Shown here: one piece after another, positions 2,067 to 64,000 of the stretch
Layout of the letters: each line of letters begins with the position of its first letter
Position numbering within the stretch: position 1 is the stretch's first letter
From: Bispira polyomma
Lineage: Eukaryota
Direction: 5' to 3'
Length of the DNA stretch: 64,000 nucleotides
NCBI GenBank assembly: GCA_965649765.1
Contig: OZ287753.1
Coordinates: 62,682,001-62,746,000, forward strand
The notes under the pieces: model-generated
What the model saw: only the letters and a program-made list of their open reading frames with translations
Databases searched by the model: none
What the model was told of the DNA's origin: nothing
Made by a program: the position numbers and the translations under genes

Positions 2067-2093
2067 GCACTCAGTGATGTGGATGATATAGAG
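2067..2093 (+). CDS. 27-nt microexon (ALSDVDDIE), phase 0/0, of the giant acidic-repeat gene
   Basis: TTTGTTCAG acceptor, GAG|GTGAGG donor, open acidic 9-codon frame; phase matches the next exon. Confidence 0.6.
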
Positions 2094-2196
2094 GTGAGGG
2101 ACTAATTACACAAGCACCTGTTTCTGTTTTGATGTTTGTTTTTTTTTTCTGTGGCATAGATGCACGATATTATAGTATCTTTTTTTTAATACACAT

Positions 2197-4870: not shown

Positions 4871-4943
4871 GAATCCGAATCAGCTGCCGAAGAGTCGGGA
4901 AGTGAGACCAGTTCTGTGGTAGAGAGGGAGAGAACACCAGTGG
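4871..4943 (+). CDS. Exon ESESAAEESGSETSSVVERERTPV, phase 0/1
   Basis: TTTTCATCAG acceptor after a pyrimidine tract, G|GTAAGT consensus donor, purine-rich coding composition. Confidence 0.8.
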
Positions 4944-4989
4944 GTAAGTCTTAACAAGGAAGATCTCTGTAGAACTGAGGCTGTAATCT

Positions 4990-5580
4990 TCTAAAATAGC
5001 CAGCTCAACTCACACCACTCCATATCTTGGGGTAGAGTAAACAGGAGGTAAAACCTGAATACATATTTTAACTCAGTGTTTAAAATACAATTAAAATAAA
5101 TGGTTACAAGTCCCCATACCTCTGGGTTAGAGTAGAACAGGAGGTAAAACCTGAATACATATTTAAATTCAGTGTTTAAAACACAATTAAAATAAATGGT
5201 CACAAGTCTCCATATATCTGGGTAGAGTAAACCGAAGGTAAAAGCTGAATACATATTTTAATTCAGTGCTGAAAACATGATTAAAATAAATGGTCACAAC
5301 TCACAAGTACAGTTTATGTCTATTTACCTGGACTTCCACACTCTAGTCTAAATTTTAGCTTGAGTTTAAAACTCAAACTCAAGTCAAAGGAAGGCTATGT
5401 GGAAATCCTCAATTATAGAAGTAACCTATACTTTTGGCCATTCTTTTCAATGGAGCATTCAGCACTGAATTTAAATATCCAGTCAGATTTTACTTATCTT
5501 CACTCTAGCCAGAGATATGTGGACTTCAGATTTGAGCTTGAAGCTGAGTTGAGCTTGATATATTTCAAGAATATGGCCCC
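4990..5580. mobile_element. MITE-like element with three ~95-bp internal tandem units and one inverted unit
   Basis: GGTAAAACCTGAATACATATTTAA units at 5030-5300, inverted copy at about 5430-5525; related sequence at 10417-10605 and 12634-12790. Confidence 0.6.
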
Positions 5581-6578: not shown

Positions 6579-6872
6579 CTGGGGAGGATGAAGGCTTTGT
6601 ACATGTGCAATCTCCCAAGCCACAAGAGGACGATTTTATACAAATCCCATCTCCCCAACCCATGCAAACAGACCAAGATGCAGGATCTGTAGATTCCGAA
6701 AATGTAGTTCCTGAGGTGGACACCAGGAGAGGGGTCTATAGATCTCCTTCGGAGGTGGAACAGATGGAAATCTCTAGCAAGAAGCAGGAAGCTTACCTAG
6801 AACTGATCCAACAGATGGATCAGCTGGTGGGTGAAGAGCCAATAGAAACAGCCGAATCTGTCGAGGAGCTAG
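6579..6872 (+). CDS. 294-nt exon (AGEDEGFVHVQSPKPQEDDFIQIPSP...ESVEEL), phase 1/1
   Basis: In frame with ORF 6605-6877; CTAAC branch-like motif and AAG acceptor; G|GTTAGA donor; acidic protein-like translation. Confidence 0.75.
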
Positions 6873-9053: not shown

Positions 9054-9196
9054 ATTCTAAATTTGTTTGTGAATACGGCCCCAGCGGGAGATTAGTGGTG
9101 TTTGTAAATATTTTTTGTATATAATACAGGGCACACACTCTTTGTAAATACATACCTAATATGTTACATTCCCTCTAATCTTGACACTAATCACAG

Positions 9197-9367
9197 AATC
9201 TCCCATTCATGAGCCATCTGTGGAAGCAGTAAGTCAAGATGACAAGCCCACTACTGATGTTGAGGACCTTATACAAGCCATGGAAAGTATTGAGGTTCAA
9301 GGTCGCGACGACAGAATGTCGACTTCCAGCGATGAACAGCCCATTGTGATCAGAGATAACATCAGAG
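9197..9367 (+). CDS. 171-nt exon (ESPIHEPSVEAV...EQPIVIRDNIR), phase 1/1
   Basis: CTAATCACAG acceptor, AG|GTAAAA donor, within ORF 9181-9474. Confidence 0.75.
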
Positions 9368-10601: not shown

Positions 10602-10776
10602 TTGAGATCGTAATACCCAGAATACTACCGTATCCACTGTATGGTTGAGATCGTAATACCCAGAATACTACCATGTCCACTGTATGGTTGAGATCGTAAT
10701 ACCCAGAACACTACCATATCCACTGTATGTTTGAGATTGTAATACCCAGAATACTACCATATCCACTGTATGGTTG
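10602..10776 (+). repeat. 43-bp minisatellite x 4
   Basis: TTGAGATCGTAATACCCAGAATACTACC(G/A)TATCCACTGTATGG at 10602, 10645, 10688, 10731. Confidence 0.95.
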
Positions 10777-10859: not shown

Positions 10860-10961
10860 AGGATGTAATCCAAGCCAAAGCAGATTCAGGTCTTCAAGGA
10901 ATGGATGATCGACTTTCGGAATCAAGTGAAGAACCCTTTATTGTAGCAGATGAGCAACCAG
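10860..10961 (+). CDS. 102-nt exon (EDVIQAKADSGLQGMDDRLSESSEEPFIVADEQP), phase 1/1
   Basis: Pyrimidine tract with AAG acceptor, CAG|GTATTA donor; peptide resembles the preceding exon. Confidence 0.7.
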
Positions 10962-11996: not shown

Positions 11997-12077
11997 AAAA
12001 GATTTCGGAGGAGTTTCAAGAAGATAAAACCAGGACCCCACCCCCTTCACCTACTGAGCAACTTTCGAAAGATCCAG
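11997..12077 (+). CDS. 81-nt exon (EKISEEFQEDKTRTPPPSPTEQLSKDP), phase 1/1
   Basis: GCTAAT branch-like motif, TACAG acceptor, CAG|GTACAA donor, open frame, length divisible by 3. Confidence 0.75.
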
Positions 12078-14356: not shown

Positions 14357-14497
14357 CTGGTATATCTACCACTGAATCATCTTCTCCTGAATATGAGACT
14401 GAAGAAGTATGGGATGGAGAAAAATGGATTCTCCTTCATAAAATATGTCTAGAGAAATCTAGCACCAGATCCAACAGATCTAGTAGATCTTTCTCAG
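14357..14497 (+). CDS. Possible 141-nt cassette exon (GISTTESSSPEYETEEVWDGEKWILLHKICLEKSSTRSNRSSRSFS), phase 1/1
   Basis: CTCAG acceptor, CAG|GTAGAT donor, stop-free and frame-preserving; splice signals weaker than neighbours. Confidence 0.45.
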
Positions 14498-17472: not shown

Positions 17473-17637
17473 GCCAAGATATTTCTGAACAAGAGTTGGC
17501 CGCTCAGTTGGCTGGGACTGAGACGATTGTGCGGGAGACGACTAGTACCACAGTAGAGAGTACCCCTGAGGTGGTACTACATGAGCCAGAGGTACCAGAG
17601 CGTAGTACCCCAGAGGAAACCAGGCCACAAGAAGATG
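17473..17637 (+). CDS. 165-nt exon (QDISEQELAAQLAG...EETRPQED), phase 1/1
   Basis: TTTTTTAG acceptor, G|GTGAGC donor, within ORF 17448-17672. Confidence 0.8.
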
Positions 17638-20640: not shown

Positions 20641-23600
20641 AATATGACATTCCAAAGAAGACTGATCTTGGTGATGAAATAATTGAAGAACAGTTTGAAA
20701 TTATAAGCAAACAGCAGCACTATTTTGATGAAGCACCACAGTCAGTGCCTGAACCTGTTGAACTATTGTCTCAACAAAAACAGGAAGATTTGATTTTAGA
20801 TTCTATGACATATAGTGACCCAGATCTATTGGAAGTAAAATCGCATCATGTGTCTTTGCAAGATCAGTTATCAGATGCAATAGATGATACAGGTGATGAA
20901 AATCTGTCCACTGAAACCAGTGTTGATGAATATATTGATGTAGATAACGATGGCACAACAGTTAAAACGACGGTCACAACTGTAAGGTATTTCCATAATA
21001 CACCGCTTGATTCTAAAAAACCTGTCAGGACAGAGATAAAAGAACAAGTTCATATATTACCACCAGGTGTTACAGGACCATATGGCGACAACCTCAAAAC
21101 TGAGACATCTACAACTCAAGAGCAACAGCAAACTGGGGATGGATTATGGCTCAATAAGACCAAAACAACAACTGTTTTTTCTGAGATGCACAGTGATCTC
21201 CAAAAATCTGTTACAGAAGAATACCCTGGGGAAATGGACAAAAGAACTGATGTTAAAGATTTGGATGAGATTAGAGATGATGGCACCCAAGTAAAAAGGA
21301 GAATTGTGATTGTTACACACTTTCAAAGAGTCACTAGAAGAACTGTGATTGAAAATACTGAAAGAACTGAACAAATAGAGAAACCAATAGGTACTGAAAT
21401 ATTGGAGACCATTGTTGAACTGGGTCCGGGTGTAGAAAGCCAGGATGATACAGGCACTGTGAAGAAAACAACAGAGAAAGAAGAGGAAGAAACTCTTGAA
21501 GATGGTACTTGGTTACAAAAGAAAACAACTACAACAAGTGTTTCATTACTTGAAAAGCCAGTATCACCAGAGGATGCAGAGATGGTACAGGGTCCTGCTG
21601 TGTTTGAAAAAGAGGAGATAGAAGGTACATTTGTTGATGCTGTGGATAGCACGGAAATGGTAGATTCAAGAGAAGAACCGGAAGCAGTGATTCAAGAGAT
21701 ACCTGGTGATGTAGAAAGCAGGATTGATGAGAGTGAGACTGAATATATTAGGGATGATGGTACAAAGATAAAAACAAAATCTGTAGTAAAGAAGTACTTC
21801 CAAGTAGCTACCTTAAAGAAAATTGGTGATGATTCAGATGAGACAGAGGTCATAGAAAAACCAGTGGGTACGGAAGTTACAGAAGACATTGTTGAACTTG
21901 AACCAGGTGTTGAAAGTTCAGAAGATCCAAATATTGTAACAAAGACTGCAGAAAGAGAAGAGGAAGAAACACTAGATGATGGAACATGGATGAAAAGGAA
22001 GGTCATTACCAAGATATGTACCTTAATATCAAAGGGGGTCTCACCACAACCCGAAGAAGCATCACCCGGTCATGAAATTGAAGAGAAGGATATTTTGACT
22101 GTCACAGACATTTCAGAGCCCGTCAGTGACCAGCAGATGGAACCGATTGTTGAGGAATACCCTGGAGAAATGGATAAAAGAACTGATGTTGAAGATTTGG
22201 ATGATATTAGAGATGATGGCACCCAAGTAAAAAGGAGAATTGTAATTGTTACACACTTTCAAAGAGTCACTAGAAGAACTGTGATTGAAAATACTGAAAG
22301 AACTGAAGAAGTAGAGAAACCAATAGGTACTGAAATATTGGAGACCATTGTTGAACTGGGTCCGGGTGTAGAAAGCCAGGATGATGAAGGAACTGTGAAG
22401 AAAACAACGGAGAAAGAGGAGGAAGAAACTCTTGAAGATGGTACTTGGTTACAAAAGAAAACAATTACAACAACTGTTTCATTACTTGAAAAGCCAGTAT
22501 CAGCAGAGGATGCAGAGATGGTACAGGGTCCTGCTGAGTTTGAGAAAGAGGAGATAGAAGGTGCATTTGTTGATGCTGTGGATAGCACGGAAATGGTAGA
22601 TTCAAGAGAAGAACCGGAAGCAGTGATTCAAGAGATTCCTGGTGATGTAGAAAGCAGCATTGATGAGGGTGAGACTGAAAATATTAGGGATGATGGTACA
22701 AAGATAAAAACAAAATCTGTAGTAAAGAAGTACTTCCAAGTAGTTACCCTAAAGAAAGTTGGTGATGATTCAGATGAGACAGAGGTCATAGAAAAACCAG
22801 TGGGTACCGAAGTTACAGAAGACATTGTGGAACTTGAACCAGGTGTTGAAAGTTCAGAAGATCCAAACATTGTCACAAAGACTACAGAAAGAGAAGAGGA
22901 AGAAACATTAGATGATGGAACATGGATGAAAAGGAAGGTCATTACCAAGACATGTACCTTAATATCAAAGGGGGTCTCACCACAACCCGAAGAAGCATCA
23001 CCCGGTCATGAAATTGAAGAGAAGGATATTTTGACTGACACAGACATTTCAGAGCCTGTCAGTGACCAGCAGATGGAACCGATTGTTGAGGAATACCCTG
23101 GAGAAATGGATAAAAGAACTGATGTTGAAGATTTGGATGATATTAGAGATGATGGCACCCAAGTAAAAAGGAGAATTGTAATTGTTACACACTTTCAAAG
23201 AGTCACTAGAAGAACTGTGATTGAAAATACTGAAAGAACTGAAGAAGTAGAGAAACCAATAGGTACTGAAATATTGGAGACCATTGTTGAACTGGGTCCG
23301 GGTGTAGAAAGCCAGGATGATGAAGGAACTGTGAAGAAAACAACGGAGAAAGAGGAGGAAGAAACTCTTGAAGATGGTACTTGGTTACAAAAGAAAACAA
23401 CTACAACAAGTGTTTCATTACTTGAAAAGCCAGTATCAGCAGAGGATGCAGAGATGGTACAGGGTCCTGCTGAGTTTGAGAAAGAGGAGATAGAAGGTGC
23501 ATTTGTTGATGCTGTGGATAGCACGGAAATGGTAGATTCAAGAGAAGAACCGGAAGCAGTGATTCAAGAGATTCCTGGTGATGTAGAAAGCAGCATTGAT

Positions 23601-32600: not shown

Positions 32601-33408
32601 GAAGAAGTAGAGAAACCAATAGGTACTGAAATATTGGAGACCATTGTTGAACTGGATCCGGGTGTAGAAAGCCAGGATGATGAAGGAACTGTGAAGAAAA
32701 CAACAGAGAAAGAAGAGGAAGAAACTCTTGAAGATGGTACTTGGTTACAAAAGAAAACAACTACAACAAGTGTTTCATTACTTGAAAAGCCAGTATCACC
32801 CAAGGATGCACAGATGGTACAGGGTCCTACTGAGTTTGAGAAAGGGGAAATAGAAGGTGCATTTGTTGATGCTGTGGATAGCACGGAAATGGTAGATTCA
32901 AGAGAAGAACCTGAAGCAGTGATTCAAGAGATACCTGGTGATGTAGAAAACAGGATTAATGAGAGTGAGACTGAATATATTAGGGATGATGGTACAAAGA
33001 TAAAAACAAAATCTGTAGTAAAGAAGTACTTCCAAGTAGTTACCCCAAAGAAAATTGGTGATGGTTTAGATGAGACAGAGGTCATAGAAAAACCAGTGGG
33101 TATGGAAGTTACAGAAGACATTGTTGAACTTGAACCAGGTGTTGAAAGTCAGGAAGATTCAAATATTGTAACAAAGACTACAAAAAGACAAGAGGAAGAA
33201 ACACTAGATGATGGAACATGGGTGAAAACGAATGTCATTACCAAGACATGTACCTTAATGACAAAACAGAGGTCACCACAACATGAAAATGATCTGGGGA
33301 GTGAATATATTAGTACACAAAATGCAATGGCTGAGCAAGAAAAAAGTTTAGATGAATTAGGTCCAGTTACAGAGGATTTGGATGATGGAGCAGAGTTTGA
33401 CAATCAAG
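20641..33408 (+). CDS. Giant exon 1 (12,768 nt, 4,256 codons): 13 x 312-aa acidic repeats; putative giant ankyrin-like exon
   Basis: ORF 20628-33425; TTGCAG acceptor ending 20640; AAG|GTAAGC donor at 33408/33409; phase 1/1. Confidence 0.9.
21219..33280 (+). repeat. Coding tandem array, 936-nt unit x 13 (last unit truncated and diverged)
   Basis: GAATACCCTGG recurs every 936 nt (21219, 22155 ... 32451); shadow antisense ORFs share the period. Confidence 0.97.
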
Positions 33409-33674
33409 GTAAGCTTGTAAGGTAGTACCACAGTTGTAAGTGTTGTCTAGCTATTTATGAATGACATTGTGTGAAAGTTATTTAGTTGAACTAGCTGTGA
33501 AAGAATGTACGTACGGAAGGATATATTTGTCTGACAATATGTTGCATGTATGTTTATGTGAAACCATGTCCAACTAACCATCAAATTATCAAGATAAGTT
33601 TCTTTTCCCTGTCGCCCATATGCACTAATAAATAGTAAGGTTACGATGTAAGCCAATAAATGATACTTTTGTAG

Positions 33675-39600: not shown

Positions 39601-42575
39601 TGAAGGAACTTGGGTAAAGCACAAGATCACAACAGTTACAGTAACATCTTTAAGAGTCGCTGATGCACCAATAGAAGAACAGCTCATAGAAGGGGATGTT
39701 GAAACCAGATCAGATACACAAGTAACTGAGGAAACAAAGGATGATGGAACATACATCCAAAGGACCGTTGTGACCACAAGTTGTTTCAAGCCAGTTGAAA
39801 CCATTAGTGTACATGATGGAGTAGAAAAGGTGGAACAGACAGAAAAGCCAGTTGGCACAGAAATCAATGAGAATATTCTCCAGTTGGGGCCGGGAGTCGA
39901 AAGTCCGGATGCTGATAATGTTGAGAAGAAAATTTCAGTGAAAGAAAGAGAGGAAAGTACCAGTGAAGGAACTTGGGTAAAGCATAAGATCACAACAGTT
40001 ACAGTTACATCTTTAAGAGTCACTGATGCACCAATAGAAGAACAGCTCAAACCATCAGACCAGTCAACTGATGTAGAAGATATCATGGCTAGAGAATCTA
40101 TGGTGGTTGATGAAAGTGCTCCAGTAATGATGCCACCTGAGGTCAGAGAAGGGGATGTTGACACCAGATCAGACACACAAGTAACTGAAGATACAAAGGA
40201 TGATGGAACATACATCAAAAGGACCATTGTGACCACAAGTCATTTCAAGCCAGTTGAAACCATTACTGTACATGATGGAGTAGAAAAGGTGGAACAGACA
40301 GAAAAGCCAGTTGGCACAGAAATCAATGAGAATATTCTCCAGTTGGGGCCGGGAGTCGAAAGTCCAGATGCTGATAATGTTGAAAAGAAAACTTCAGTGA
40401 AAGAAAGAGAGGAAAGTACCAGTGAAGGAACTTGGGTAAGGCATAAGATCACAACAGTTACAGTAACATCTTTAAGAGTCACTGATGCACCAATAGAAGA
40501 ACAGCTCAAACCATCAGACCAGTCAACTGATGTAGAAGATATCATAGCTAGAGAATCTATGATGGTTGATGAAAGTGCTCCAGTAATGATGCCACCTGTG
40601 GTCAGAGAAGGGGATGTTGACACCAGATCAGACACACAAGTAACTGAAGATACAAAGGATGATGGAACATACATCAAAAGGACCATTGTGACCACAAGTC
40701 ATTTCAAGCCAGTCAAATCCATTAGTGTACATGATGGAGTAGAAAAGGTGGAACAGACAGAAAAGCCAGTTGGCACAGAAATCAATGAGAATATTCTCCA
40801 GTTAGGGCCGGGAGTTAAAAGTCCAGATGCTGAAAATGTTGAAAAGAGAACTTCAGTGAAAGAAAGAGAGGAAACTTCTGATGATGGTTCTTGGATGAAA
40901 CACAAAACAACCATTGTAACTTGTAGAGTAATTTCATCATTGAGTGAGCAACATAGTGAAATTGCAGTTCAGCAACTGGTTGAAACAGATATTGAAATAA
41001 ATACAGAACTTACAGAGTTCCAAGAAACTCTGGAGGATGGTACTGTAATCTATCATAAGACTATTAAAAAGACACATTCCAAAAGAATCCAAGAAGCTGA
41101 AAATGTTGATGGATTTGAAAAAGTTGATTTTGATAAAACACTATTAGGAACTGAAATTTCTGAAGAAATCTTACAGTTAGCTCCAGGTATTTTGCCAGAT
41201 CAAACAGAAAATATTGAAAAGAAAGCATCAACACAGACACAGGAGGAAATCCTGGACAATGGAACATGGTTGAAGAAAACAGTAACAACAGTATGTGTAA
41301 CTAGACAAGCAGAAGTAGAGTGTCCTGATGAATTAAGCAGTCAGAATCGAGGGATTCAATCCTGGTATCAGTTGCAAGATGATAATCGTGAATCAACCCC
41401 AGTTGCATCAGATGGACAATTTGATGAACAGTGTTACCATGAAACAGACTTAGCACGTGATGAAAGAGAACAGACTCCTGTTTTTGAAGAAGCACTGGAA
41501 GAGCAAATTGCAGAAGGTCAGGAACAGCTGCCACATGATATTCATCAGCCATTAACTCTTGACGAGTTAGATACATCACTGGAAGATTTTCAGCCAGATG
41601 AAGAGTTGATATCACCATCATCAGAGTATGAAGAAATAGAGGAAGTTCTGCCTGATGGTACTGTAATAACACGTAAAGTTTTGTCTCAAAGAATTAGAAA
41701 AACTGTAACTCGTAAAATTCGTAGGGTAGGGCCTGATGGTGAGGTAATAGAAGATGTTGTAACAGAAGAAATCCCTGAGACTGATCTTTTATCAGAATCT
41801 TCCAGGGCATCAAGTGTAATGTCTAGTATAAGTGATGCCCGTGAGTTAACATCCCCTATTCCTATGTCTCCTGTAGAATTAGGTACCCCAGTTGAATCAG
41901 AAACAGAACGTTCCTCAGTGAGAGTCTACACTGATACCATTGAAGGCGAACCAGAGATTGAGACAGATGTCCAAGAATTTGAAGAAACCCTTCCAGATGG
42001 CACCGTGGTGAAAAGGAAAGTTATTAAAACCAGACAGAAGCAGACTATTGTCAAAAGAGTGGTGATGGAAGGACCAGAAACAGATTTGCCTACCACTGAG
42101 GAACAAGCTCAAGCAATGCTGAGTCATGACGGAGGGTTCCAACCGGACATGAAGTACAGTGACTATACAGAGGAAGAACCACAAACGGCAACACAGGTTC
42201 AAGAATATGAGGAAACTATGCCTGATGGAAGTGTGGTGAAAAAGAAAATAGTGACTACAACAGAGGAACAAATGAAAACATCTCGCACTGTAATGGAAGC
42301 AAGTAGTCCACCACCAGAATTGATTGAAGGACAGCATATTTCCAGCTCTACAGATGAAGCAGATGACTTTGAAATTGTAAATTACCCAGTTGATGAATCA
42401 ATGGTAAAGCCAGAGTTTCTACCAGCAAAACCATTGAAACAGCCATACATGCCAGAAGGTGAGCAGAGTACAAAGGAAGATGTGCTAGCTGAGACGGATG
42501 ACTACTATGAGGTATCTGCAGAAGATGTTGGGTTGAGAGCAGTAGAGGAGCCTGATGTGGTCCCAAATCTTCAAG
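33675..42575 (+). CDS. Giant exon 2 (8,901 nt, 2,967 codons): 16 module repeats plus unique N- and C-terminal parts
   Basis: TTTTGTAG acceptor, in frame with ORF 33749-42589; AAG|GTAGAA donor; 266-nt intron from exon 1; phase 1/1. Confidence 0.88.
34070..40920 (+). repeat. Coding tandem array of 459-nt and 363-nt units, 16 modules
   Basis: Spacing of equivalent positions: 462,459,459,363,459,363,459,459,363,459,459,459,363,459,459. Confidence 0.95.
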
Positions 42576-45569: not shown

Positions 45570-45605
45570 GTGAAGAAGAACAAACGCCTGGTTTCTACGT
45601 ACAAG
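45570..45605 (+). CDS. 36-nt microexon (GEEEQTPGFYVQ), phase 1/1
   Basis: TTTTGTTGTAG acceptor, AAG|GTAGGA donor, frame-preserving. Confidence 0.65.
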
Positions 45606-47422: not shown

Positions 47423-47440
47423 GAAAGAAAGCTAAAACAG
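47423..47440 (+). CDS. 18-nt microexon (GKKAKT), phase 1/1
   Basis: CTTCATCAG acceptor, CAG|GTAAGA strong donor, same frame as next exon. Confidence 0.5.
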
Positions 47441-47509: not shown

Positions 47510-47626
47510 TTGTGGAGAATGGGGTTGATGCTCAAGTTACCATAACAATAACAGAAGACAATAGTTCTCCAGTTGATGATGATGATTTTGTTAAATACTA
47601 TGGTCTTGAGGAACATGTTGAAAAAG
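47510..47626 (+). CDS. 117-nt exon (VVENGVDAQVTITITEDNSSPVDDDDFVKYYGLEEHVEK), phase 1/1
   Basis: AAG acceptor after a T-rich tract, AAG|GTACGG donor, within ORF 47395-47721. Confidence 0.65.
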
Positions 47627-49446: not shown

Positions 49447-49497
49447 CCTTTCCACAGAAAGAACAGATACAACAAGAGGACACTGAAATAGAAGAAG
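49447..49497 (+). CDS. 51-nt exon (FPQKEQIQQEDTEIEE), phase 1/1
   Basis: Strong tract TTTCTTTCTTTTCTTTTAG, AAG|GTACAT donor, acidic frame-preserving peptide. Confidence 0.7.
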
Positions 49498-52302: not shown

Positions 52303-55300
52303 ATAAGGGAATTCTTGAAGAACCCCATGCCCCTGTTTCCTCTGTTGTTGTGATGTTTGAAGATAAGGCTAAGCTTATAGACCAGGATATATCGCATTTA
52401 ATGTCTCTGAAAGAGAAACAGAAGGTTGTAAGTGAAAGTAGAAACAAACAAACTCGACATGATCAGAATCTTGAGGAACTGAATCAAACTGATAAGATAC
52501 TACAAGAAATGATGGAAAGTAGTCCTGATGAAAGTATTGTAATTGAAACTCAAAAAGATGTCAAAACAATAGTAAGTATGTTTGAAGACAGTGACTTAGA
52601 TCGACCGTTGGAAAAATTTACACCAATTTTACACATGCAAAAAAACACAGAAGAAGAAACAGTTGTAGATAGTGAAAACATCATTCAGGCAGAAATTACT
52701 ACAGAATTTGAAATGAATAGAGTACAGACAATACAACAGATAGAGCCAAAGAGAGGAATTCAAGATGGACGATCAACCACAATAGACAGTCAATCAAAGG
52801 CAAAGGAATTATTGGTAGTGGATATTGATACTTTTGGAGCAGTTTCTGAAGCAACAACAGAAACCGTTATCCCTGATAAGGAATCAGTTGAAGTGGAAGG
52901 TGAACAAACTACTGTTGTCATAAAAGATGATACAGAAGAGGAAGTGAAAACTGTTACTGACATTGAAGGCAAGGAAGAGTTGATAGAAGAAACTGTTGAG
53001 GAAGCTGTGAGTGAACCAGTTCTAGAACAGCACGTTACTGAAGATGAAGCTGAAGTAATGCCAGCTGTTATTGAAGACCTGCCTCTGACAGAAGATATGG
53101 AAAAAGAAACTGTTGAAAAAATGGATGATACAGAGAAGGAAGAGACCATAATTGCAGACATTGAAACTAAAGATGAGTCTACACCAGTTACTTTTGAGGA
53201 AGCTGCAAGTGAGCCATTGGATGAAATAGTTTTAGAAAAGCATGTTGGTGATGACGAAGTAGAAATGGAGCCTGCAGTTATTCCTGACATGCCTGTATCA
53301 CTAGATGTAGATAGAGAAGCATTTGAGGAAGTATCTGAGCCGTCTGGAGATGCAGAGCCAGAGGAAGATACAAAACTTAAAGTAGACATCGAACTGCAAG
53401 ATATCAGTGAAGAACATATTGACAAAGAAACTCTTATTGAAACTGAACCAGATACAGAAGCAAAGGAAAGTGTAGAGACTGGTATTGCCTCAGAAGAATT
53501 TGAAGATGTAGCCATTGCCGAAAGTGTGGTAACTGAAGCAATAATAATGGCTACTGAAACAGTGGATGAATTTGCTGTAGAAGAATCAAGTAAAGACATA
53601 GAATCTATTGAGGAAGTATCAGATAAAACACAGGAGGAAAAAGATATTGATACTATAGAAGCAGTTTCTGAAGCAACAGCAGAAACCGTTATCCCTGATA
53701 AGAAATCAGTTGAAGTGGAAGGTGAACAAACTACTGTTGTCATAAAAGATGATACAGAAGAAGAAGTGAAAACAGTTACTGACATTGAAGGCAAGGAAGA
53801 GGTAATAGAAGAAACTGTTGAGGAAGCTGTGAGTGAACCAGTTCTAGAACGGCACGTTACTGGAGATGAAGCTGAAATAATGCCAGCTGTTATTGAAGAC
53901 CTGCCTCTGACAGAAGATGTGGAAAAAGAAACTGTTGAAAAAATGGATGATACAGAGAAGGAAGAGACCATAATTGCAGACATTGAAACTAAAGATGAGT
54001 CTACACCAGTTACTTTTGAGGAAGCTGCAAGTGAGCCATTGGATGAAATAGTTTTAGAAAAGCATGTTGGTGACGACGAAGTAGAAATGGAGCCTGCAGT
54101 TATTCCTGACATGCCTGTATCACTAGATGCAGATAGAGAAGCATTTGAGGAAGTAGCTGAGCTGTCTGGAGATGCAGAGCCAGAGGAAGATACAAAACTT
54201 AAAGTAGACATCGAACTGCAAGATGATATCAGTGAAGAACATATTGACACAGAAACTCTTGTTGAAGCTGAACCGGATACAGAAGCAAAGGAAAGTGTAG
54301 AGACTGGTATTGCCTCAGAAGAATTTGAAGATGCAGCCATTGCCGAAAGTGTGGTAACTGAAGCAATAATAATGGCTACTGAAACAGTTAATGAATTTGC
54401 TGTAGAAGAATCAAGTAAAGACATAGAATCTATTGAGGAAGTATCAGATAAAACACAGGAGGAGAAAGATATTGATACTATAGAAGCAGTTTCTGAAGCA
54501 ACAGCAGAAACCGTTATCCCTGATAAGAAATCAGTTGAAGTGGAAGGTGAACAAACTACTGTTGTCGTGGAAGATGATACAGAAGAGGAAGTGAAAACTG
54601 TTACTGACATTGAAGGCAAGGAAGAGTTGATAGAAGAAACTGTTGAGGAAACTGTGAGTGAACCAGTTCTAGAACAGCACGTTACTGAAGATGGAGCTGA
54701 AATAATGCCAGCTGCTATTGAAGAATTGCCTCTGACAGAAGACGTGGAAAAAGAAACTGTTGAAAAAATGGATGATACAGAGAAGGAAGAAACCAAAATT
54801 GCAGACATTGAAACTAAAGATGAGTCTACACCAGTTACTTTTGAAGAAGCTGCAAGTGAGCCATTGGATGAAATAGTTTTAAAAGAGCATGTTGGTGACG
54901 ACCAAGTACAAATTGAGTCTGCAGTTATTCCTCACATGCCTGTATCACTAGATGTAGATAGAGAAACATTTGAGGAAGTAGCTGAGCCGTCTGGAGATGC
55001 AGAGCCAGAGGAAGATACAAAACTTAAATTAGACATCGAACTGCAAGATGATATCAGTGAAGAACATATTGACACAGAAACTCTTGTTGAAGCTGAACCG
55101 GATACAGAAGCAAAGGAAAGTATAGAGACTGGTATTGCCTCAGAAGAATTTAAAGGTGCAGCCATTGGCGAAAGTTTGGTAACTGAAGCAATAATAATGG
55201 CCACTGAAGTAGTGGATGAATTTGCTGTACAAGAATCAAGTAAAGACATAGAATCTATTGAGGAAGTATCAGAGAAAGCACAGGAGAAAGATATTGATAC

Positions 55301-58300
55301 TATAGAAGCAGTTTCTGAAGCAACAACAGAAACCGTTATGCCTGATAAGGAATCAGTTGAAGTGGAAGGTGAACAAACTACTGTTGTCGTGGAAGATGAT
55401 ACAGAAGAGGAAGTGAAAACTGTTACTGACACTGAAGGGAAGGATGAGTTGGTAGAAGAAACTGTTGAGGAAGCTGTTAGTGAACCAGTTCTAGAACAGC
55501 ACGTTACTGAAGATGAAGCTGAAATAAGGCCAGCTGGTATTGAAGACTTGCCTCCAACAGAAGATGTGGAAAAAGAAACTGTTGAAAAAATGGATGATAC
55601 AGAGAAGGAAGAGACCATAATTGCAGACATTGAAACTAAAGATGAGTCTACACCAGTTACTTTTGAGGAAGCTGCAAGTGAGCCATTGGATGAAATAGTT
55701 TTAGAAAAGCATGTTGGTGATGACGAAGTAGAAATGGAGCCTGCAGTTATTCCTGACATGCCTGTATCACTAGATGTAGATAGAGAAGCATTTGAGGAAG
55801 TATCTGAGCCGTCTGGAGATACAGAGCCAGAGGAAGATACAAAACTTAAAGTAGACATCGAACTGCAAGATATCAGTGAAAAACATATTGACAAAGAAAC
55901 TCTTATTGAAACTGAACCAGATACAGAAGCAAAGGAAAGTGTAGAGACTGGTATTGCCTCAGAAGAATTTGAAGATGTAGCCATTGCCGAAAGTGTGGTA
56001 ACTGAAGCAATAATAATGGCTACTGAAACAGTGGATGAATTTGCTGTAGAAGAATCAAGTAAAGACATAGAATCTATTGAGGAAGTATCAGATAAAACAC
56101 AGGAGGAAAAAGATATTGATACTATAGAAGCAGTTTCTGAAGCAACAGCAGAAACCGTTATCCCTGATAAGAAATCAGTTGAAGTGGAAGGTGAACAAAC
56201 TACTGTTGTCATAAAAGATGATACAGAAGAAGAAGTGAAAACAGTTACTGACATTGAAGGCAAGGAAGAGGTAATAGAAGAAACTGTTGAGGAAGCTGTG
56301 AGTGAACCAGTTCTAGAACTGCACGTTACTGGAGATGAAGCTGAAATAATGCCAGCTGTTATTGAAGACCTGCCTCTGACAGAAGATGTGGAAAAAGAAA
56401 CTGTTGAAAAAATGGATGATACAGAGAAGGAAGAGACCATAATTGCAGACATTGAAACTAAAGATGAGTCTACACCAGTTACTTTTGAGGAAGCTGCAAG
56501 TGAGCCATTGGATGAAATAGTTTTAGAAAAGCATGTTGGTGACGACGAAGTAGAAATGGAGCCTGCAGTTATTCCTGACATGCCTGTATCACTAGATGCA
56601 GATAGAGAAGCATTTGAGGAAGTAGCTGAGCTGTCTGGAGATGCAGAGCCAGAGGAAGATACAAAACTTAAAGTAGACATCGAACTGCAAGATGATATCA
56701 GTGAAGAACATATTGACACAGAAACTCTTGTTGAAGCTGAACCGGATACAGAAGCAAAGGAAAGTGTAGAGACTGGTATTGCCTCAGAAGAATTTGAAGA
56801 TGCAGCCATTGCCGAAAGTGTGGTAACTGAAGCAATAATAATGGCTACTGAAACAGTTAATGAATTTGCTGTAGAAGAATCAAGTAAAGACATAGAATCT
56901 ATTGAGGAAGTATCAGATAAAACACAGGAGGAGAAAGATATTGATACTATAGAAGCAGTTTCTGAAGCAACAGCAGAAACCGTTATCCCTGATAAGAAAT
57001 CAGTTGAAGTGGAAGGTGAACAAACTACTGTTGTCGTGGAAGATGATACAGAAGAGGAAGTGAAAACTGTTACTGACATTGAAGGCAAGGAAGAGTTGAT
57101 AGAAGAAACGGTTGAGGAAACTGTGAGTGAACCAGTTCTAGAACAGCACGTTACTGAAGATGGAGCTGAAATAATGCCAGCTGCTATTGAAGAATTGCCT
57201 CTGACAGAAGACGTGGAAAAAGAAACTGTTGAAAATATGGATGATACAGAGAAGGAAGAAACCAAAATTGCAGACATTGAAACTAAAGATGAGTCTACAC
57301 CAGTTACTTTTGAAGAAGCTGCAAGTGAGCCATTGGATGAAATAGTTTTAGAAGAGCATGTTGGTGACGACCAAGTACAAATTGAGTCTGCAGTTATTCC
57401 TCACATGCCTGTATCACTAGATGTAGATAGAGAAACATTTGAGGAAGTAGCTGAGCCGTCTGGAGATGCAGAGCCAGAGGAAGATACAAAACTTAAATTA
57501 GACATCGAACTGCAAGATGATATCAGTGAAGAACATATTGACACAGAAACTCTTGTTGAAGCTGAACCGGATACAGAAGCAAAGGAAAGTGTAGAGACTG
57601 GTATTGCCTCAGAAGAATTTGAAGATGCAGCCATTGCCGAAAGTGTGGTAACTGAAGCAATAATAATGGCTACTGAAACAGTGGATGAATTTGCTGTAGA
57701 AGAATCAAGTAAAGACATGGAATCTTTAGAGAAAGTATCAGAGAAAACACAGGAGGAGAAAGATATTGATACTATAGAAGCAGTTTCTGAAGTAACAGCA
57801 GAAACCGTTATCCCTGATAAGAAATCAGTTGAAGTGGAAGGTGAACAAACTACTGTTGTCGTGGAAGATGATACAGAGGAGGAAGTGAAAACTGTTATTG
57901 ACATTGAAGGCAAGGAAGAGTTGATAGAAGAAACTGTTGAGGAAGCTGTGAGTGAACCAGTTCTAGAACAGCATGTTACTGAAGATGGAGCTGAAATAAT
58001 GCCAGCTGTTATTGAAGAATTGCCTCTGACAGAAGACGTGGAAAAAGAAACTGTTGAAAAAATATATGATACAGAGAAGGAAGAAACCAAAATTGCAGAC
58101 ATTGAAACTAAAGATGAGTCTACACCAGTTACTTTTGAGGAAGCTGCAAGTGAGCCATTGGATGAAATAGTTTTAGAAGAGCATGTTGGTGACGACGAAG
58201 TACAAATTGAGTCTGCAGTTATTCCTCACATGCCTGTATCACTAGATGTAGATAGAGAAACATTTGAGGAAGTAGCTGAGCCGTCTGGAGATGCAGAGCC

Positions 58301-61300
58301 GGAGGAAAATACAAAACTTAAATTAGACATCGAACTGCAAGATGATATCAGTGAAGAACATATTGACACAGAAACTCTTGTTGAAACTGAACCGGATACA
58401 GAAGCAAAGGAAAGTATAGAGACTGGTATTGCCTCAGAAGAATTTAAAGGTGCAGCCATTGGCGAAAGTTTGGTAACTGAAGCAATAATAATGGCCACTG
58501 AAGTAGTGGATGAATTTGCTGTACAAGAATCAAGTAAAGACATAGAATCTATTGAGGAAGTATCAGAGAAAGCACAGGAGAAAGATATTGATACTATAGA
58601 AGCAGTTTCTGAAGCAACAACAGAAACCGTTATGCCTGATAAGGAATCAGTTGAAGTGGAAGGTGAACAAACTACTGTTGTCGTGGAAGATGATACAGAA
58701 GAGGAAGTGAAAACTGTTACTGACACTGAAGGGAAGGATGAGTTGGTAGAAGAAACTGTTGAGGAAGCTGTTAGTGAACCAGTTCTAGAACAGCACGTTA
58801 CTGAAGATGAAGCTGAAATAAGGCCAGCTGGTATTGAAGACTTGCCTCCAACAGAAGATGTGGAAAAAGAAACTGTTGAAAAAATGGATGATACAGAGAA
58901 GGAAGAGACCATAATTGCAGACATTGAAACTAAAGATGAGTCTACACCAGTTACTTTTGAGGAAGCTGCAAGTGAGCCATTGGATGAAATAGTTTTAGAA
59001 AAGCATGTTGGTGATGACGAAGTAGAAATGGAGCCTGCAGTTATTCCTGACATGCCTGTATCACTAGATGTAGATAGAGAAGCATTTGAGGAAGTATCTG
59101 AGCCGTCTGGAGATGCAGAGCCAGAGGAAGATACAAAACTTAAAGTAGACATCGAACTGCAAGATATCAGTGAAGAACATATTGACAAAGAAACTCTTAT
59201 TGAAACTGAACCAGATACAGAAGCAAAGGAAAGTGTAGAGACTGGTATTGCCTCAGAAGAATTTGAAGATGTAGCCATTGCCGAAAGTGTGGTAACTGAA
59301 GCAATAATAATGGCTACTGAAACAGTGGATGAATTTGCTGTAGAAGAATCAAGTAAAGACATAGAATCTATTGAGGAAGTATCAGATAAAACACAGGAGG
59401 AAAAAGATATTGATACTATAGAAGCAGTTTCTGAAGCAACAGCAGAAACCGTTATCCCTGATAAGAAATCAGTTGAAGTGGAAGGTGAACAAACTACTGT
59501 TGTCATAAAAGATGATACAGAAGAAGAAGTGAAAACAGTTACTGACATTGAAGGCAAGGAAGAGGTAATAGAAGAAACTGTTGAGGAAGCTGTGAGTGAA
59601 CCAGTTCTAGAACTGCACGTTACTGGAGATGAAGCTGAAATAATGCCAGCTGTTATTGAAGACCTGCCTCTGACAGAAGATGTGGAAAAAGAAACTGTTG
59701 AAAAAATGGATGATACAGAGAAGGAAGAGACCATAATTGCAGACATTGAAACTAAAGATGAGTCTACACCAGTTACTTTTGAGGAAGCTGCAAGTGAGCC
59801 ATTGGATGAAATAGTTTTAGAAAAGCATGTTGGTGACGACGAAGTAGAAATGGAGCCTGCAGTTATTCCTGACATGCCTGTATCACTAGATGCAGATAGA
59901 GAAGCATTTGAGGAAGTAGCTGAGCTGTCTGGAGATGCAGAGCCAGAGGAAGATACAAAACTTAAAGTAGACATCGAACTGCAAGATGATATCAGTGAAG
60001 AACATATTGACACAGAAACTCTTGTTGAAGCTGAACCGGATACAGAAGCAAAGGAAAGTGTAGAGACTGGTATTGCCTCAGAAGAATTTGAAGATGCAGC
60101 CATTGCCGAAAGTGTGGTAACTGAAGCAATAATAATGGCTACTGAAACAGTTAATGAATTTGCTGTAGAAGAATCAAGTAAAGACATAGAATCTATTGAG
60201 GAAGTATCAGATAAAACACAGGAGGAGAAAGATATTGATACTATAGAAGCAGTTTCTGAAGCAACAGCAGAAACCGTTATCCCTGATAAGAAATCAGTTG
60301 AAGTGGAAGGTGAACAAACTACTGTTGTCGTGGAAGATGATACAGAAGAGGAAGTGAAAACTGTTACTGACATTGAAGGCAAGGAAGAGTTGATAGAAGA
60401 AACTGTTGAGGAAACTGTGAGTGAACCAGTTCTAGAACAGCACGTTACTGAAGATGGAGCTGAAATAATGCCAGCTGCTATTGAAGAATTGCCTCTGACA
60501 GAAGACGTGGAAAAAGAAACTGTTGAAAAAATGGATGATACAGAGAAGGAAGAAACCAAAATTGCAGACATTGAAACTAAAGATGAGTCTACACCAGTTA
60601 CTTTTGAGGAAGCTGCAAGTGAGCCATTGGATGAAATAGTTTTAGAAGAGCATGTTGGTGACGACGAAGTACAAATTGAGTCTGCAGTTATTCCTCACAT
60701 GCCTGTATCACTAGATGTAGATAGAGAAACATTTGAGGAAGTAGCTGAGCCGTCTGGAGATGCAGAGCCGGAGGAAAATACAAAACTTAAATTAGACATC
60801 GAACTGCAAGATGATATCAGTGAAGAACATATTGACACAGAAACTCTTGTTGAAACTGAACCGGATACAGAAGCAAAGGAAAGTATAGAGACTGGTATTG
60901 CCTCAGAAGAATTTAAAGGTGCAGCCATTGGCGAAAGTTTGGTAACTGAAGCAATAATAATGGCCACTGAAGTAGTGGATGAATTTGCTGTACAAGAATC
61001 AAGTAAAGACATAGAATCTATTGAGGAAGTATCAGAGAAAGCACAGGAGAAAGATATTGATACTATAGAAGCAGTTTCTGAAGCAACAACAGAAACCGTT
61101 ATGCCTGATAAGGAATCAGTTGAAGTGGAAGGTGAACAAACTACTGTTGTCGTGGAAGATGATACAGAAGAGGAAGTGAAAACTGTTACTGACACTGAAG
61201 GGAAGGATGAGTTGGTAGAAGAAACTGTTGAGGAAGCTGTTAGTGAACCAGTTCTAGAACAGCACGTTACTGAAGATGAAGCTGAAATAAGGCCAGCTGG

Positions 61301-64000
61301 TATTGAAGACTTGCCTCCAACAGAAGATGTGGAAAAAGAAACTGTTGAAAAAATGGATGATACAGAGAAGGAAGAGACCATAATTGCAGACATTGAAACT
61401 AAAGATGAGTCTACACCAGTTACTTTTGAGGAAGCTGCAAGTGAGCCATTGGATGAAATAGTTTTAGAAAAGCATGTTGGTGATGACGAAGTAGAAATGG
61501 AGCCTGCAGTTATTCCTGACATGCCTGTATCACTAGATGTAGATAGAGAAGCATTTGAGGAAGTATCTGAGCCGTCTGGAGATGCAGAGCCAGAGGAAGA
61601 TACAAAACTTAAAGTAGACATCGAACTGCAAGATATCAGTGAAGAACATATTGACAAAGAAACTCTTATTGAAACTGAACCAGATACAGAAGCAAAGGAA
61701 AGTGTAGAGACTGGTATTACCTCAGAAGAATTTGAAGATGTAGCCATTGCCGAAAGTGTGGTAACTGAAGCAATAATAATGGCTACTGAAACAGTGGATG
61801 AATTTGCTGTAGAAGAATCAAGTAAAGACATAGAATCTATTGAGGAAGTATCAGATAAAACACAGGAGGAAAAAGATATTGATACTATAGAAGCAGTTTC
61901 TGAAGCAACAGCAGAAACCGTTATCCCTGATAAGAAATCAGTTGAAGTGGAAGGTGAACAAACTACTGTTGTCATAAAAGATGATACAGAAGAAGAAGTG
62001 AAAACAGTTACTGACATTGAAGGCAAGGAAGAGGTAATAGAAGAAACTGTTGAGGAAGCTGTGAGTGAACCAGTTCTAGAACTGCACGTTACTGGAGATG
62101 AAGCTGAAATAATGCCAGCTGTTATTGAAGACCTGCCTCTGACAGAAGATGTGGAAAAAGAAACTGTTGAAAAAATGGATGATACAGAGAAGGAAGAGAC
62201 CATAATTGCAGACATTGAAACTAAAGATGAGTCTACACCAGTTACTTTTGAGGAAGCTGCAAGTGAGCCATTGGATGAAATAGTTTTAGAAAAGCATGTT
62301 GGTGACGACGAAGTAGAAATGGAGCCTGCAGTTATTCCTGACATGCCTGTATCACTAGATGCAGATAGAGAAGCATTTGAGGAAGTAGCTGAGCTGTCTG
62401 GAGATGCAGAGCCAGAGGAAGATACAAAACTTAAAGTAGACATCGAACTGCAAGATGATATCAGTGAAGAACATATTGACACAGAAACTCTTGTTGAAGC
62501 TGAACCGGATACAGAAGCAAAGGAAAGTGTAGAGACTGGTATTGCCTCAGAAGAATTTGAAGATGCAGCCATTGCCGAAAGTGTGGTAACTGAAGCAATA
62601 ATAGTGGCTACTGAAACAGTTAATGAATTTGCTGTAGAAGAATCAAGTAAAGACATAGAATCTATTGAGGAAGTATCAGATAAAACACAGGAGGAGAAAG
62701 ATATTGATACTATAGAAGCAGTTTCTGAAGCAACAGCAGAAACCGTTATCCCTGATAAGAAATCAGTTGAAGTGGAAGGTGAACAAACTACTGTTGTCGT
62801 GGAAGATGATACAGAAGAGGAAGTGAAAACTGTTACTGACATTGAAGGCAAGGAAGAGTTGATAGAAGAAACTGTTGAGGAAACTGTGAGTGAACCAGTT
62901 CTAGAACAGCACGTTACTGAAGATGGAGCTGAAATAATGCCAGCTGCTATTGAAGAATTGCCTCTGACAGAAGACATGGAAAAAGAAACTGTTGAAAAAA
63001 TGGATGATACAGAGAAGGAAGAAACCAAAATTGCAGACATTGAAACTAAAGATGAGTCTACACCAGTTACTTTTGAGGAAGCTGCAAGTGAGCCATTGGA
63101 TGAAATAGTTTTAGAAGAGCATGTTGGTGACGACGAAGTACAAATTGAGTCTGCAGTTATTCCTCACATGCCTGTATCACTAGATGTAGATAGAGAAACA
63201 TTTGAGGAAGTAGCTGAGCCGTCTGGAGATGCAGAGCCGGAGGAAAATACAAAACTTAAATTAGACATCGAACTGCAAGATGATATCAGTGAAGAACATA
63301 TTGACACAGAAACTCTTGTTGAAACTGAACCGGATACAGAAGCAAAGGAAAGTATAGAGACTGGTATTGCCTCAGAAGAATTTAAAGGTGCAGCCATTGG
63401 CGAAAGTTTGGTAACTGAAGCAATAATAATGGCCACTGAAGTAGTGGATGAATTTGCTGTACAAGAATCAAGTAAAGACATAGAATCTATTGAGGAAGTA
63501 TCAGAGAAAGCACAGGAGAAAGATATTGATACTATAGAAGCAGTTTCTGAAGCAACAACAGAAACCGTTATGCCTGATAAGGAATCAGTTGAAGTGGAAG
63601 GTGAACAAACTACTGTTGTCGTGGAAGATGATACAGAAGAGGAAGTGAAAACTGTTACTGACACTGAAGGGAAGGATGAGTTGGTAGAAGAAACTGTTGA
63701 GGAAGCTGTTAGTGAACCAGTTCTAGAACAGCACGTTACTGAAGATGAAGCTGAAATAATGCCAGCTGGTATTGAAGACTTGCCTCCAACAGAAGATGTG
63801 GAAAAAGAAACTGTTGAAAAAATGGATGATACAGAGAAGGAAGAGACCATAATTGCAGACATTGAAACTAAAGATGAGTCTACACCAGTTACTTTTGAGG
63901 AAGCTGCAAGTGAGCCATTGGATGAAATAGTTTTAGAAAAGCATGTTGGTGATGACGAAGTAGAAATGGAGCCTGCAGTTATTCCTGACATGCCTGTATC
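52303..64000 (+). CDS. Giant exon 3 (>=11,698 nt, runs off window): DKGILEEPHAP... then 274/275-aa E/D/T/V-rich repeats
   Basis: TTTTTTTTAAG acceptor, phase 1; manual translation open through the unique 5' part into the repeats; all repeat indels are 3 nt; absent from the ORF track, consistent with no stop inside the window. Confidence 0.88.
52821..64000 (+). repeat. Coding tandem array, 822/825-nt units x 13 plus a partial unit, 2,469-nt higher-order repeat
   Basis: GATATTGATACT at 52821, 53643, 54468, 55290, 56112, 56937, 57762, 58584, 59406, 60231, 61053, 61875, 62700, 63522. Confidence 0.95.

What the first reader, a model, noticed from the sequence alone, without database searches (positions are those of the whole stretch)
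2067..64000. One gene with three separate giant, repeat-built exons (>=33 kb coding, >=11,500 aa in this window): a likely ultra-giant ankyrin
Seen: 12.8-kb, 8.9-kb and >=11.7-kb open exons with canonical splice sites, linked in frame to about 12 small acidic exons. Known: giant neuronal ankyrins (Drosophila Ank2-L/XL, C. elegans UNC-44, vertebrate AnkG/AnkB) gain size through huge acidic exons; in fly and worm these follow the death domain, and Ank2-XL is tandemly repeated. Inference: this is a lineage-specific giant ankyrin tail with three giant exons, which could give a product over 1 MDa if co-included. The family assignment rests on architecture and short motifs only.
Basis: partly seen in the sequence, partly recalled or inferred. 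Interest (0 to 1): 0.85.

Follow-up and report, generated by a model that had tools for sequence, protein, structure and literature searches.

The report
Four-giant-exon ankyrin of a worm
This is the tail of the animal's single ankyrin gene, a scaffold that ties membrane proteins to the cytoskeleton; it carries four giant optional exons (60 kb of code, up to about 2.5 MDa of protein), two of them chains of a folded domain found in no database searched.

Summary
Observation confirmed and larger than reported. The exons lie between the ANK-ZU5-UPA-death-domain exons (9-91 kb upstream) and the conserved last exon (40 kb downstream) of the genome's only canonical ankyrin. There are four giant in-phase cassette exons, not three: 12.8, 8.9, 31.2 and 7.4 kb; all included gives about 22,700 aa. 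The 2016 survey's maximum was two exons, 27.8 + 5.1 kb (Drosophila). The first two hold 46 copies of a 110-aa all-beta module (AlphaFold pLDDT 96; no Pfam or PDB match), under purifying selection and shared at about 35% identity with other animals, against the view that these repeats are species-specific. The 31-kb exon is a glutamate-rich repeat with free sequence but an open frame; the matching open frames in three other assemblies are 4,900, 10,200 and 19,900 aa. Mitochondrial layout points to a sabelline fan worm. No RNA of this species was available: splicing and co-inclusion are unproven, and a relative's intron-free contig skips the last two giant exons. The scan noted the module and third exon before, on this same DNA only.

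The parts
2067..2093 (+). Candidate 27-nt phase 0-0 micro-exon, optional; the last death-domain-side core exon ends in phase 0 about 6.6 kb before the window
   Evidence: AG/GT and open frame; no homology support
4871..4943 (+). Small tail exon, phase 0-1, switches the tail to phase 1
   Evidence: matches nemertean ankyrin residues 1742-1756 above all 200 shuffles
6579..6872 (+). Small tail exon, phase 1-1
   Evidence: nemertean 1752-1812, score 93 vs shuffle max 68
9197..9367 (+). Small tail exon, phase 1-1
   Evidence: nemertean 1823-1862, score 71 vs shuffle max 57
10860..10961 (+). Small tail exon, phase 1-1; its end resembles the end of exon 9197
   Evidence: score 44 vs shuffle max 42
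11997..12077 (+). Small tail exon with a TPPPSP motif, phase 1-1
   Evidence: nemertean 1858-1881, score 54 vs shuffle max 47
14357..14497 (+). Small tail exon with a WDG hairpin motif, phase 1-1
   Evidence: nemertean 1893-1902, score equal to shuffle max
17473..17637 (+). Small tail exon, phase 1-1
   Evidence: colinear with nemertean 1925-1967 but within shuffle range
20641..33408 (+). Giant exon G1, 12,768 nt, 4,256 codons: 13 tandem 936-nt units, 27 copies of the 110-aa beta module with ~45-aa linkers
   Evidence: end-to-end orthologue P0067 of 6,216 aa, 61% identical; omega 0.48 between units
33675..42575 (+). Giant exon G2, 8,901 nt, 2,967 codons: 19 module matches (units of 153 and 121 aa) and a conserved non-repeated tail
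   Evidence: AlphaFold models; omega 0.49
45570..45605 (+). Candidate 36-nt exon, phase 1-1
   Evidence: splice signals and phase only; no homology
47423..47440 (+). Candidate 18-nt basic micro-exon, phase 1-1
   Evidence: splice signals and phase only
47510..47626 (+). Candidate small acidic exon, phase 1-1
   Evidence: splice signals and phase only
49447..49497 (+). Candidate small acidic exon, phase 1-1
   Evidence: splice signals and phase only
52303..64000 (+). First 11.7 kb of giant exon G3 (whole exon 52303-83541 in continued numbering, 31,239 nt, 10,413 codons): about 33 units of 273-275 aa, 24% Glu, unrelated to the module, then a ~1,000-aa unique tail. Beyond the window the gene goes on with exon G3b (84850-85788), 86180-86275, giant exon G4 (87916-95289, 7,374 nt, non-repetitive), a penultimate exon (103869-103944) and the last coding exon (104491-104710)
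   Evidence: omega 1.36, no stop, indels all 3n; G3 end matches nemertean 2392-2477 and last exon 2615-2674; G4 has 38 homologues

Best explanation
The window is the post-death-domain tail of the genome's single canonical ankyrin, in what is probably a sabelline fan worm (annelid). SHOWN: gene membership, four giant phase 1-1 exons, open frames kept across repeat units and species. INFERRED from known ankyrin biology: the core anchors to membrane proteins (ANK repeats) and spectrin (ZU5), and alternative inclusion of the cassettes sets the length and kind of a very long acidic tail, from a short ~2,300-aa form to at most ~22,700 aa. INFERRED from this anatomy: the tail has three kinds of part. 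G4 is the conserved, non-repetitive long exon with short binding motifs. G3 is a length-tunable polyacidic spacer, comparable to Drosophila Ank2-XL, which spaces microtubules and sets axon diameter. G1/G2 are beads-on-a-string chains of a folded beta module that act as an extensible tether or a multivalent docking chain. Most likely the giant cassettes are used in different combinations in neurons (perhaps muscle too), not always all together.
For: ANK exons at -91 to -47 kb, ZU5 at -32 kb (best PDB matches Ankyrin-1/2/3, E 1e-27 to 1e-31), UPA at -18/-13 kb (only UPA_2 hits in the genome), death domain at -9 kb. A nemertean RefSeq ankyrin (XP_074648678.1) matches colinearly the core, five small window exons, the G2 tail, the G3 end and the last exon. 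All exons from 6579 to G4 are phase 1-1. Residues S,E,T,D,K,P make up 54-59% of each giant exon, as in Jegla 2016 (PMC5135030). No stop among 212 variant alleles where 6.7 are expected, and 5 of 5 indels are 3n. The G1 orthologue is open over 6,216 aa at 61% identity. The same exon order and donor positions occur in other animals. Intron-free contig L038 joins a G2-type tail to the penultimate and last exons, without G3/G4. Module: pLDDT 95.7; tandem pLDDT 94.8 but pTM 0.50, so independent beads. Ank2-XL function: PMC6131297, PMC6703079.
Against: No RNA run of this species; the three runs are DNA and show no joints. The 15 listed nemertean isoforms are 2,070-2,688 aa, none with a G4-sized exon, and the two inspected carry no full module. 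No annotated protein was found with a full ankyrin core plus module arrays. Tissue, partners and the module's role are untested; the module structure is a prediction. The host is inferred from mitochondrial layout only; the cytochrome b search did not name it.
Confidence: 0.8

Rival explanations
1. All four giant exons are included together in a main isoform, giving one ~22,700-aa, ~2.5-MDa ankyrin, about twice Drosophila Ank2-XL, used in the giant axons of fan worms.
For: Every cassette is phase-compatible, so a complete open frame exists. G1 and G2 are only 266 nt apart. G3, G3b and G4 keep their order in other animals. Sabellid giant axons are known (own knowledge; a paper search found no citation).
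Against: L038 shows a G2-type tail joined to the end without G3/G4. Drosophila L and XL are separate isoforms (PMC6703079). The nemertean gene has isoforms numbered up to at least X47, with homologous segments skipped. The layout also occurs in animals whose identity I could not establish, so a link to giant axons is unproven.
Confidence: 0.3
2. The giant cassettes, or the module arrays, serve mainly a non-neuronal mechanical role (body-wall muscle or epidermis): a titin-like extensible chain that links membrane to myofibril, with the hairpin motif acting like the obscurin-binding tail of vertebrate muscle ankyrins.
For: Independent beta domains in tandem are the design of load-bearing proteins; the weak structural neighbours include G5/SasG/Aap rods (Z 2.9-3.3). 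The acidic hairpin motif recalls the obscurin-binding region of small ankyrin-1 (from memory).
Against: Z about 3 is not significant. The resemblance to the obscurin-binding region could not be confirmed: no PDB sequence match. Known giant ankyrin isoforms are neuronal (PMC5135030, PMC6703079).
Confidence: 0.25
3. The giant frames form a separate gene, or are unused, inside an ankyrin intron.
For: No direct RNA evidence in this species. Repeats homogenised by gene conversion can stay open for a time.
Against: The G2 tail and G3 end are parts of a nemertean ankyrin model. Module arrays run in one frame into the ankyrin last-exon motif in P0004, P0071 and P0102, and follow UPA in P0018-P0027. 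Exon ends are kept in other animals; frames stay open at 39% amino-acid divergence.
Confidence: 0.04
4. Exon sizes are inflated by mis-assembly of tandem repeats.
For: The G3 array is about 28 kb and 11 unit pairs are identical; its depth was not measured.
Against: Short-read depth gives 6-15 copies for G1/G2 repeats. G3 units are mostly about 95% identical, with two sub-arrays and an 823-aa higher-order period. Independent assemblies hold frames of 10,191 and 19,917 aa at the same place.
Confidence: 0.06

Closest known systems
Drosophila Ank2 (Ank2-L 450 kDa, Ank2-XL 1,200 kDa; long exons 27,804 and 5,132 bp)
   Same: Canonical core; long exons after the death domain; one huge tandem-repeat acidic exon (G3 is the analogue of XL) and one shorter exon (G4).
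   Different: Four giant exons totalling 60.3 kb against two totalling 32.9 kb; G3 is 31.2 kb with 275-aa units against 93 x 76 aa; two further exons are arrays of a predicted folded domain; all are internal phase 1-1 cassettes. No sequence homology to Ank2 long exons was tested or claimed.
Lophotrochozoan giant ankyrins in Jegla et al. 2016 (Aplysia 7,569 + 6,560 bp; Lottia 6,818 bp; Glossoscolex, transcriptome only)
   Same: Post-death-domain position; S/E/T/D/K/P-rich composition; G4 is of this size class.
   Different: That survey found at most two long exons, repeats of 36-228 bp, and repeat homology only between very close species. Here the units are 363-936 bp and the module is shared at about 35% identity across many assemblies.
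Tubulanus polymorphus ankyrin LOC141904097 (RefSeq XP_074648678.1 and isoforms)
   Same: Colinear core, small tail exons, hairpin motifs, G3-end motif and last exon.
   Different: Listed isoforms are 2,070-2,688 aa, with half-module hairpins only and no giant exon.
C. elegans UNC-44 (14,974-bp long exon); vertebrate giant AnkG/AnkB (6-8 kb exon before the death domain)
   Same: Size gained through unusually long acidic exons.
   Different: A single long exon; in vertebrates on the other side of the death domain.
G5/E-domain rods (SasG, Aap) and Ig/Fn3 chains of titin-like proteins, as analogues of the module chain
   Same: Tandem all-beta domains with conserved glycines.
   Different: No significant sequence or structure match (best G5 Z 3.3; best overall Z 4.5-5.1; no Foldseek hit at E 0.001); tandem model shows no fixed inter-domain orientation.

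Membership tests
Canonical ankyrin | N-terminal array of 24 ankyrin repeats | tested here: met
   Exons at -91.3 to -46.7 kb cover residues 38-828 of the nemertean ankyrin colinearly at mostly 65-94% identity; repeats not counted one by one
Canonical ankyrin | ZU5-ZU5-UPA cassette | tested here: met
   ZU5 E 1.8e-19, best PDB matches Ankyrin-1/2/3; residues 1102-1577 matched at 69-80%; the only UPA_2 hits in the genome
Canonical ankyrin | Death domain after UPA | tested here: met
   PF00531 at C6:62673096, + strand, E 9.7e-8; second exon by tblastn
Canonical ankyrin | Window exons belong to the same transcription unit | tested here: met
   Nested between death-domain exons and the conserved last exon; five small exons match the nemertean tail in order above all shuffles. 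By homology and phase, not by RNA
Bilaterian giant ankyrin (Jegla 2016) | Multi-kilobase exon next to the death domain (after it in protostomes) | tested here: met
   Four exons of 7.4-31.2 kb after the death domain
Bilaterian giant ankyrin (Jegla 2016) | S,E,T,D,K,P above about 55% and S+E about 25% | tested here: met
   54-59% and 21-30% in G1-G4
Bilaterian giant ankyrin (Jegla 2016) | Long exon spliced into ankyrin mRNA in this species | not testable with these tools
   No RNA run holds the stretch; the three runs laid are DNA. Indirect support from L038 and the nemertean model
Bilaterian giant ankyrin (Jegla 2016) | Neuronal expression; axon or synapse organisation | not testable with these tools
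   Known for fly, worm and vertebrates only
   Pfam finds none in the 4,300 residues of G1-G3 scanned or in 123 module copies; upstream exons are ankyrin
G5 domain (SasG/Aap rods) | G5 sequence profile or fold | tested here: not met
   No Pfam G5 hit; VIA Z 2.9-3.3 only
Obscurin-binding tail of vertebrate ankyrins | Homology to the small-ankyrin-1 obscurin-binding segment | tested here: inconclusive
   No PDB sequence match for the module or the G2 tail; the resemblance is recalled from memory and no reference sequence was available

The most novel reading that the evidence does not exclude
Annelids (and perhaps other spiralians) have a class of ultra-giant ankyrins of 2.5 MDa or more, near titin in size, made by co-including several giant exons. 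These carry chains of tens of copies of an undescribed beta-fold domain plus a spacer exon of 15-60 kb, and their length tracks axon calibre, as in the giant escape axons of fan worms.
Probability: 0.2. Interest if true: 0.9.

Novelty: new variant of a known kind. Interest (0 to 1): 0.72.

Why it matters
Giant ankyrin long exons are treated as fast-evolving, compositionally biased spacers, at most two per gene. This locus nearly doubles the long-exon coding length known from Drosophila, holds an internal coding exon longer than any in the 2016 survey, and shows that part of a giant tail can be a chain of a conserved, probably folded domain that Pfam and the PDB lack. That domain is small (110 aa) and can be expressed, solved and pulled on. 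The spacer exon varies four-fold between species (4,900-19,900 aa), so the open question whether spacer length sets microtubule spacing or axon diameter becomes testable by comparison. It also poses a splicing problem: faithful recognition of 30-60 kb exons.

Tried and rejected
RNA evidence: the run search found no RNA holder; my single read-laying run (31500-36500) showed DNA coverage across the G1-G2 intron and no joints. Logan contigs behind two G4 homologues (L036, L037) look genomic. As the operators required, the spliced model was searched exon by exon by reference; the joined model was never built as a sequence or searched, and the total size is a sum of exon lengths plus a core length borrowed from the nemertean protein. 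G3 could not be searched at full length: no single reference is long enough to reach 10,000-aa candidates. P0067 was too long for the contig look-up. Pfam hits on the giant exons (SMP, Microp_apicomplexa and others) are short matches summed over repeats and were rejected. Structure searches gave no credible match; weak results do not prove a new fold. Host identification by cytochrome b failed (best 60-67%). Two PDB look-ups failed on my own frame slips; one was corrected. Literature searches for spiralian multi-exon giant ankyrins found nothing beyond Jegla 2016; the library lacks most subscription papers.
Full report
Observation. Three stop-free frames of 4,268, 2,986 and at least 3,899 codons lie on the + strand. 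The window is G000:C6:62682001-62746000; I fetched 100 kb on each side and number it as a continuation of the window. The third frame runs to 83558, and a fourth of 2,493 codons follows at 87870-95348. With AG/GT ends the exons are G1 20641-33408 (12,768 nt), G2 33675-42575 (8,901), G3 52303-83541 (31,239) and G4 87916-95289 (7,374), plus a 939-nt exon G3b and small exons. Every exon from 6579 to G4 is phase 1-1 and divisible by three; 4871 converts phase 0 to 1 and 103869 converts 1 to 2 for the last exon. The four giant exons sum to 60,282 nt and all candidate tail exons to 62,886 nt (20,962 codons). With a core of about 1,740 aa the ceiling is about 22,700 aa, roughly 2.5 MDa (giant exons and G3b alone 2.27 MDa).

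The arrays are real. In three DNA runs the G1-G2 intron is covered at depth 20, 20 and 77 and the repeat contigs at 6-15 times that. These runs gave no splice joints because they are DNA; no RNA run holds the stretch.

Gene identity. ZU5 lies at -32 kb, UPA at -18 and -13 kb and a death domain at -9 kb, all on +. The UPA_2 hits are the only ones in the genome, and the ZU5 exon's PDB matches are Ankyrin-1, -2 and -3. A nemertean RefSeq ankyrin (P0028, XP_074648678.1) maps colinearly: ANK exons from -91 to -47 kb, the ZU5-ZU5-UPA cassette at 69-80% identity, the death domain, then the start and tail of G2, the tail and end of G3, and an exon at 104.5 kb that matches its C-terminus. Compared one by one, exons 4871, 6579, 9197, 10860 and 11997 match its tail in order above all 200 shuffles; 14357 equals the best shuffle; 2067, 17473, 45570, 47510 and 49447 have no such support, and 47423 was not compared. 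So the giant exons are nested inside the ankyrin gene.

G1 and G2. Both are built from one 110-aa module: 27 copies in G1 (period 312 aa, two modules) and 19 matches in G2 (units of 153 and 121 aa), one partial copy in the G3 tail, and none elsewhere in the genome. A profile of 123 diverse copies (about 35% identical to the first) finds 186 representative proteins, some with 30-45 copies. Pfam, PDB sequences and the Atlas feature search give nothing. AlphaFold predicts six strands at pLDDT 95.7; a tandem pair gives pLDDT 94.8 but pTM 0.50 with a low-confidence linker, that is two independent domains. Foldseek has no match at E 0.001, the best Z is 4.5-5.1, G5-type rods score about 3, and the best Atlas row is an unnamed protein at TM 0.60. 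This does not prove a new fold, but no known one was found. Variation between units is biased to synonymous change (omega 0.48 and 0.49). P0067 is an end-to-end G1 orthologue, 61% identical, 6,216 aa with 39 modules; its contig has the same length as that of a 75%-identical G4, so probably the same contig. Jegla 2016 reported repeats of 36-228 bp with homology only between very close species; this module does not fit that rule. It is tied to ankyrins elsewhere too: it follows UPA directly in P0018-P0027 and runs into the last-exon motif in P0004, P0071 and P0102. The nemertean has only half-module hairpins.

G3 and G4. G3 holds about 33 units of 273-275 aa, 24% glutamate, net charge -0.27 per residue, unrelated to the module, then about 1,000 unique residues. 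Amino-acid change between units is unconstrained (omega 1.36), yet over the three arrays none of 212 variant alleles is a stop (6.7 expected) and all five indels are multiples of three: the frame and composition matter, the sequence does not. G4 is non-repetitive, Ser/Glu-rich, has four SLxEFExLE motifs and 38 homologues; by size and character it is the likely counterpart of the ordinary lophotrochozoan long exon (inference).

The design is shared. In ERZ21939214 a 3,493-aa module exon is followed by a 10,191-aa glutamate-rich frame with different repeats, then G3-end, G3b and G4 homologues. ERZ25767047 has 4,904 aa and ERZ26222911 19,917 aa at the G3 position, each ending in the conserved G3-end motifs and a matching donor-like site. 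I saw only the last 7 kb of those two frames; their lengths are the database's gene calls. The animals are not named in the tool output.

Splicing, indirectly. Contig L038 (JGI 3300008043) holds one frame that matches the G2 tail (57%), the penultimate exon (50%) and the last exon (79%), the last two abutting without intron, and lacks the G3 repeats, G3 end and G4. It looks like a spliced transcript of a relative, although an intron-poor genomic copy is not excluded. It supports splicing of a G2-type exon into ankyrin mRNA and skipping of G3/G4. The nemertean isoforms include or drop the homologous segments independently.

Host. The 15.5-kb mitochondrial contig has cox1, cox2, cox3 and nad3 on one strand, the other protein genes found and the large rRNA on the other, with the rRNA region directly before cox1. 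PMC13602327 describes this strand split and the block (-rrnL)-(-rrnS)-cox1 for Sabella, Sabellastarte, Branchiomma and Bispira. The host is therefore probably a sabelline fan worm. That these worms have giant escape axons is my own knowledge, not confirmed by the paper search.

How it most likely works. The core is anchored at the membrane and spectrin skeleton (established for ankyrins). Cassette splicing chooses the tail (phases shown, use inferred). G3 acts as a polyacidic spacer whose length can change freely, like Drosophila Ank2-XL, which with Futsch/MAP1B spaces microtubules and sets axon diameter (PMC6131297, PMC6703079). G1/G2 add flexible chains of folded domains, as tether or multivalent dock (structure predicted, function inferred). 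G4 and the conserved exon ends supply short binding motifs (inferred from conservation). I put 0.97 on ankyrin membership, 0.9 on each giant exon being used in some isoform, 0.3 on routine co-inclusion of all four, and 0.6 on a mainly neuronal role.

Verdict. A new variant of a known kind. Giant ankyrins are known across bilaterians, including annelids and molluscs, with at most two long exons and 32.9 kb in Drosophila. New here, as far as the searchable literature shows: four giant exons, a 31-kb internal exon with a counterpart of about 60 kb in another animal, and a conserved, probably folded repeat domain. Interest 0.72; it is held down by the lack of RNA or protein evidence and by the family being well known.

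Noticed in passing
L032:1-7007 (ENA ERZ26222911): End of a called 19,917-aa open frame (about 60 kb) at the G3 position of another animal's ankyrin; if one exon, about twice the size of G3.
   Followed up: partly
L021:2023-7473, L023:4617-10391 (P0018-P0027): Ankyrin-like genes in which the second UPA exon (about 40% identical to this one) runs straight into 10-12 modules, with no death domain between; this is the side on which chordates carry their long exon. From memory the JGI samples are gutless oligochaete worms; not verified.
   Followed up: partly
P0109-P0206: Many short proteins with a single copy of the module inside otherwise disordered acidic or proline-rich sequence; gene context unknown. 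P0082 (5,841 aa) and P0150 (UPA plus divergent copies) are distant versions.
   Followed up: no
L027 (window numbering 87916-95289), residues 1679-1820 of G4: Four spaced copies of an SLxEFExLE motif, in a part of G4 conserved among homologues; a candidate binding motif.
   Followed up: no
window 33711: Second in-frame AG acceptor 36 nt inside G2, also phase 1.
   Followed up: no
L005, window numbering -56117 to -51636: Cluster of overlapping ORFs (up to 870 aa) in an ankyrin intron, 45% GC, with reverse-transcriptase-like words; looks like a DIRS-type retroelement. Observed only.
   Followed up: no
L010, window numbering -7934 to -7290: 215-codon open frame of short tandem repeats right after the second death-domain exon's donor; probably an intronic minisatellite.
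   Followed up: no
window 1-1067: 142-bp tandem repeat that decays towards the right; further short tandem repeats at 5018-5299 (96 bp) and 10602-10776 (43 bp).
   Followed up: no
window 6420-6510: About 90-bp dispersed repeat just upstream of exon 6579, with at least 40 copies across the genome.
   Followed up: no
L034-L035 (G000:C75): Mitochondrial genome with genes on both strands in the pattern described for Sabellinae; cytochrome b at most 60-67% identical to anything found.
   Followed up: partly
window numbering about 72500-80700 (L011-L012): G3 array changes from an 823-aa higher-order period (274/275-aa units) to plain 273-aa units near its 3' end: two sub-arrays homogenised separately.
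   Followed up: partly
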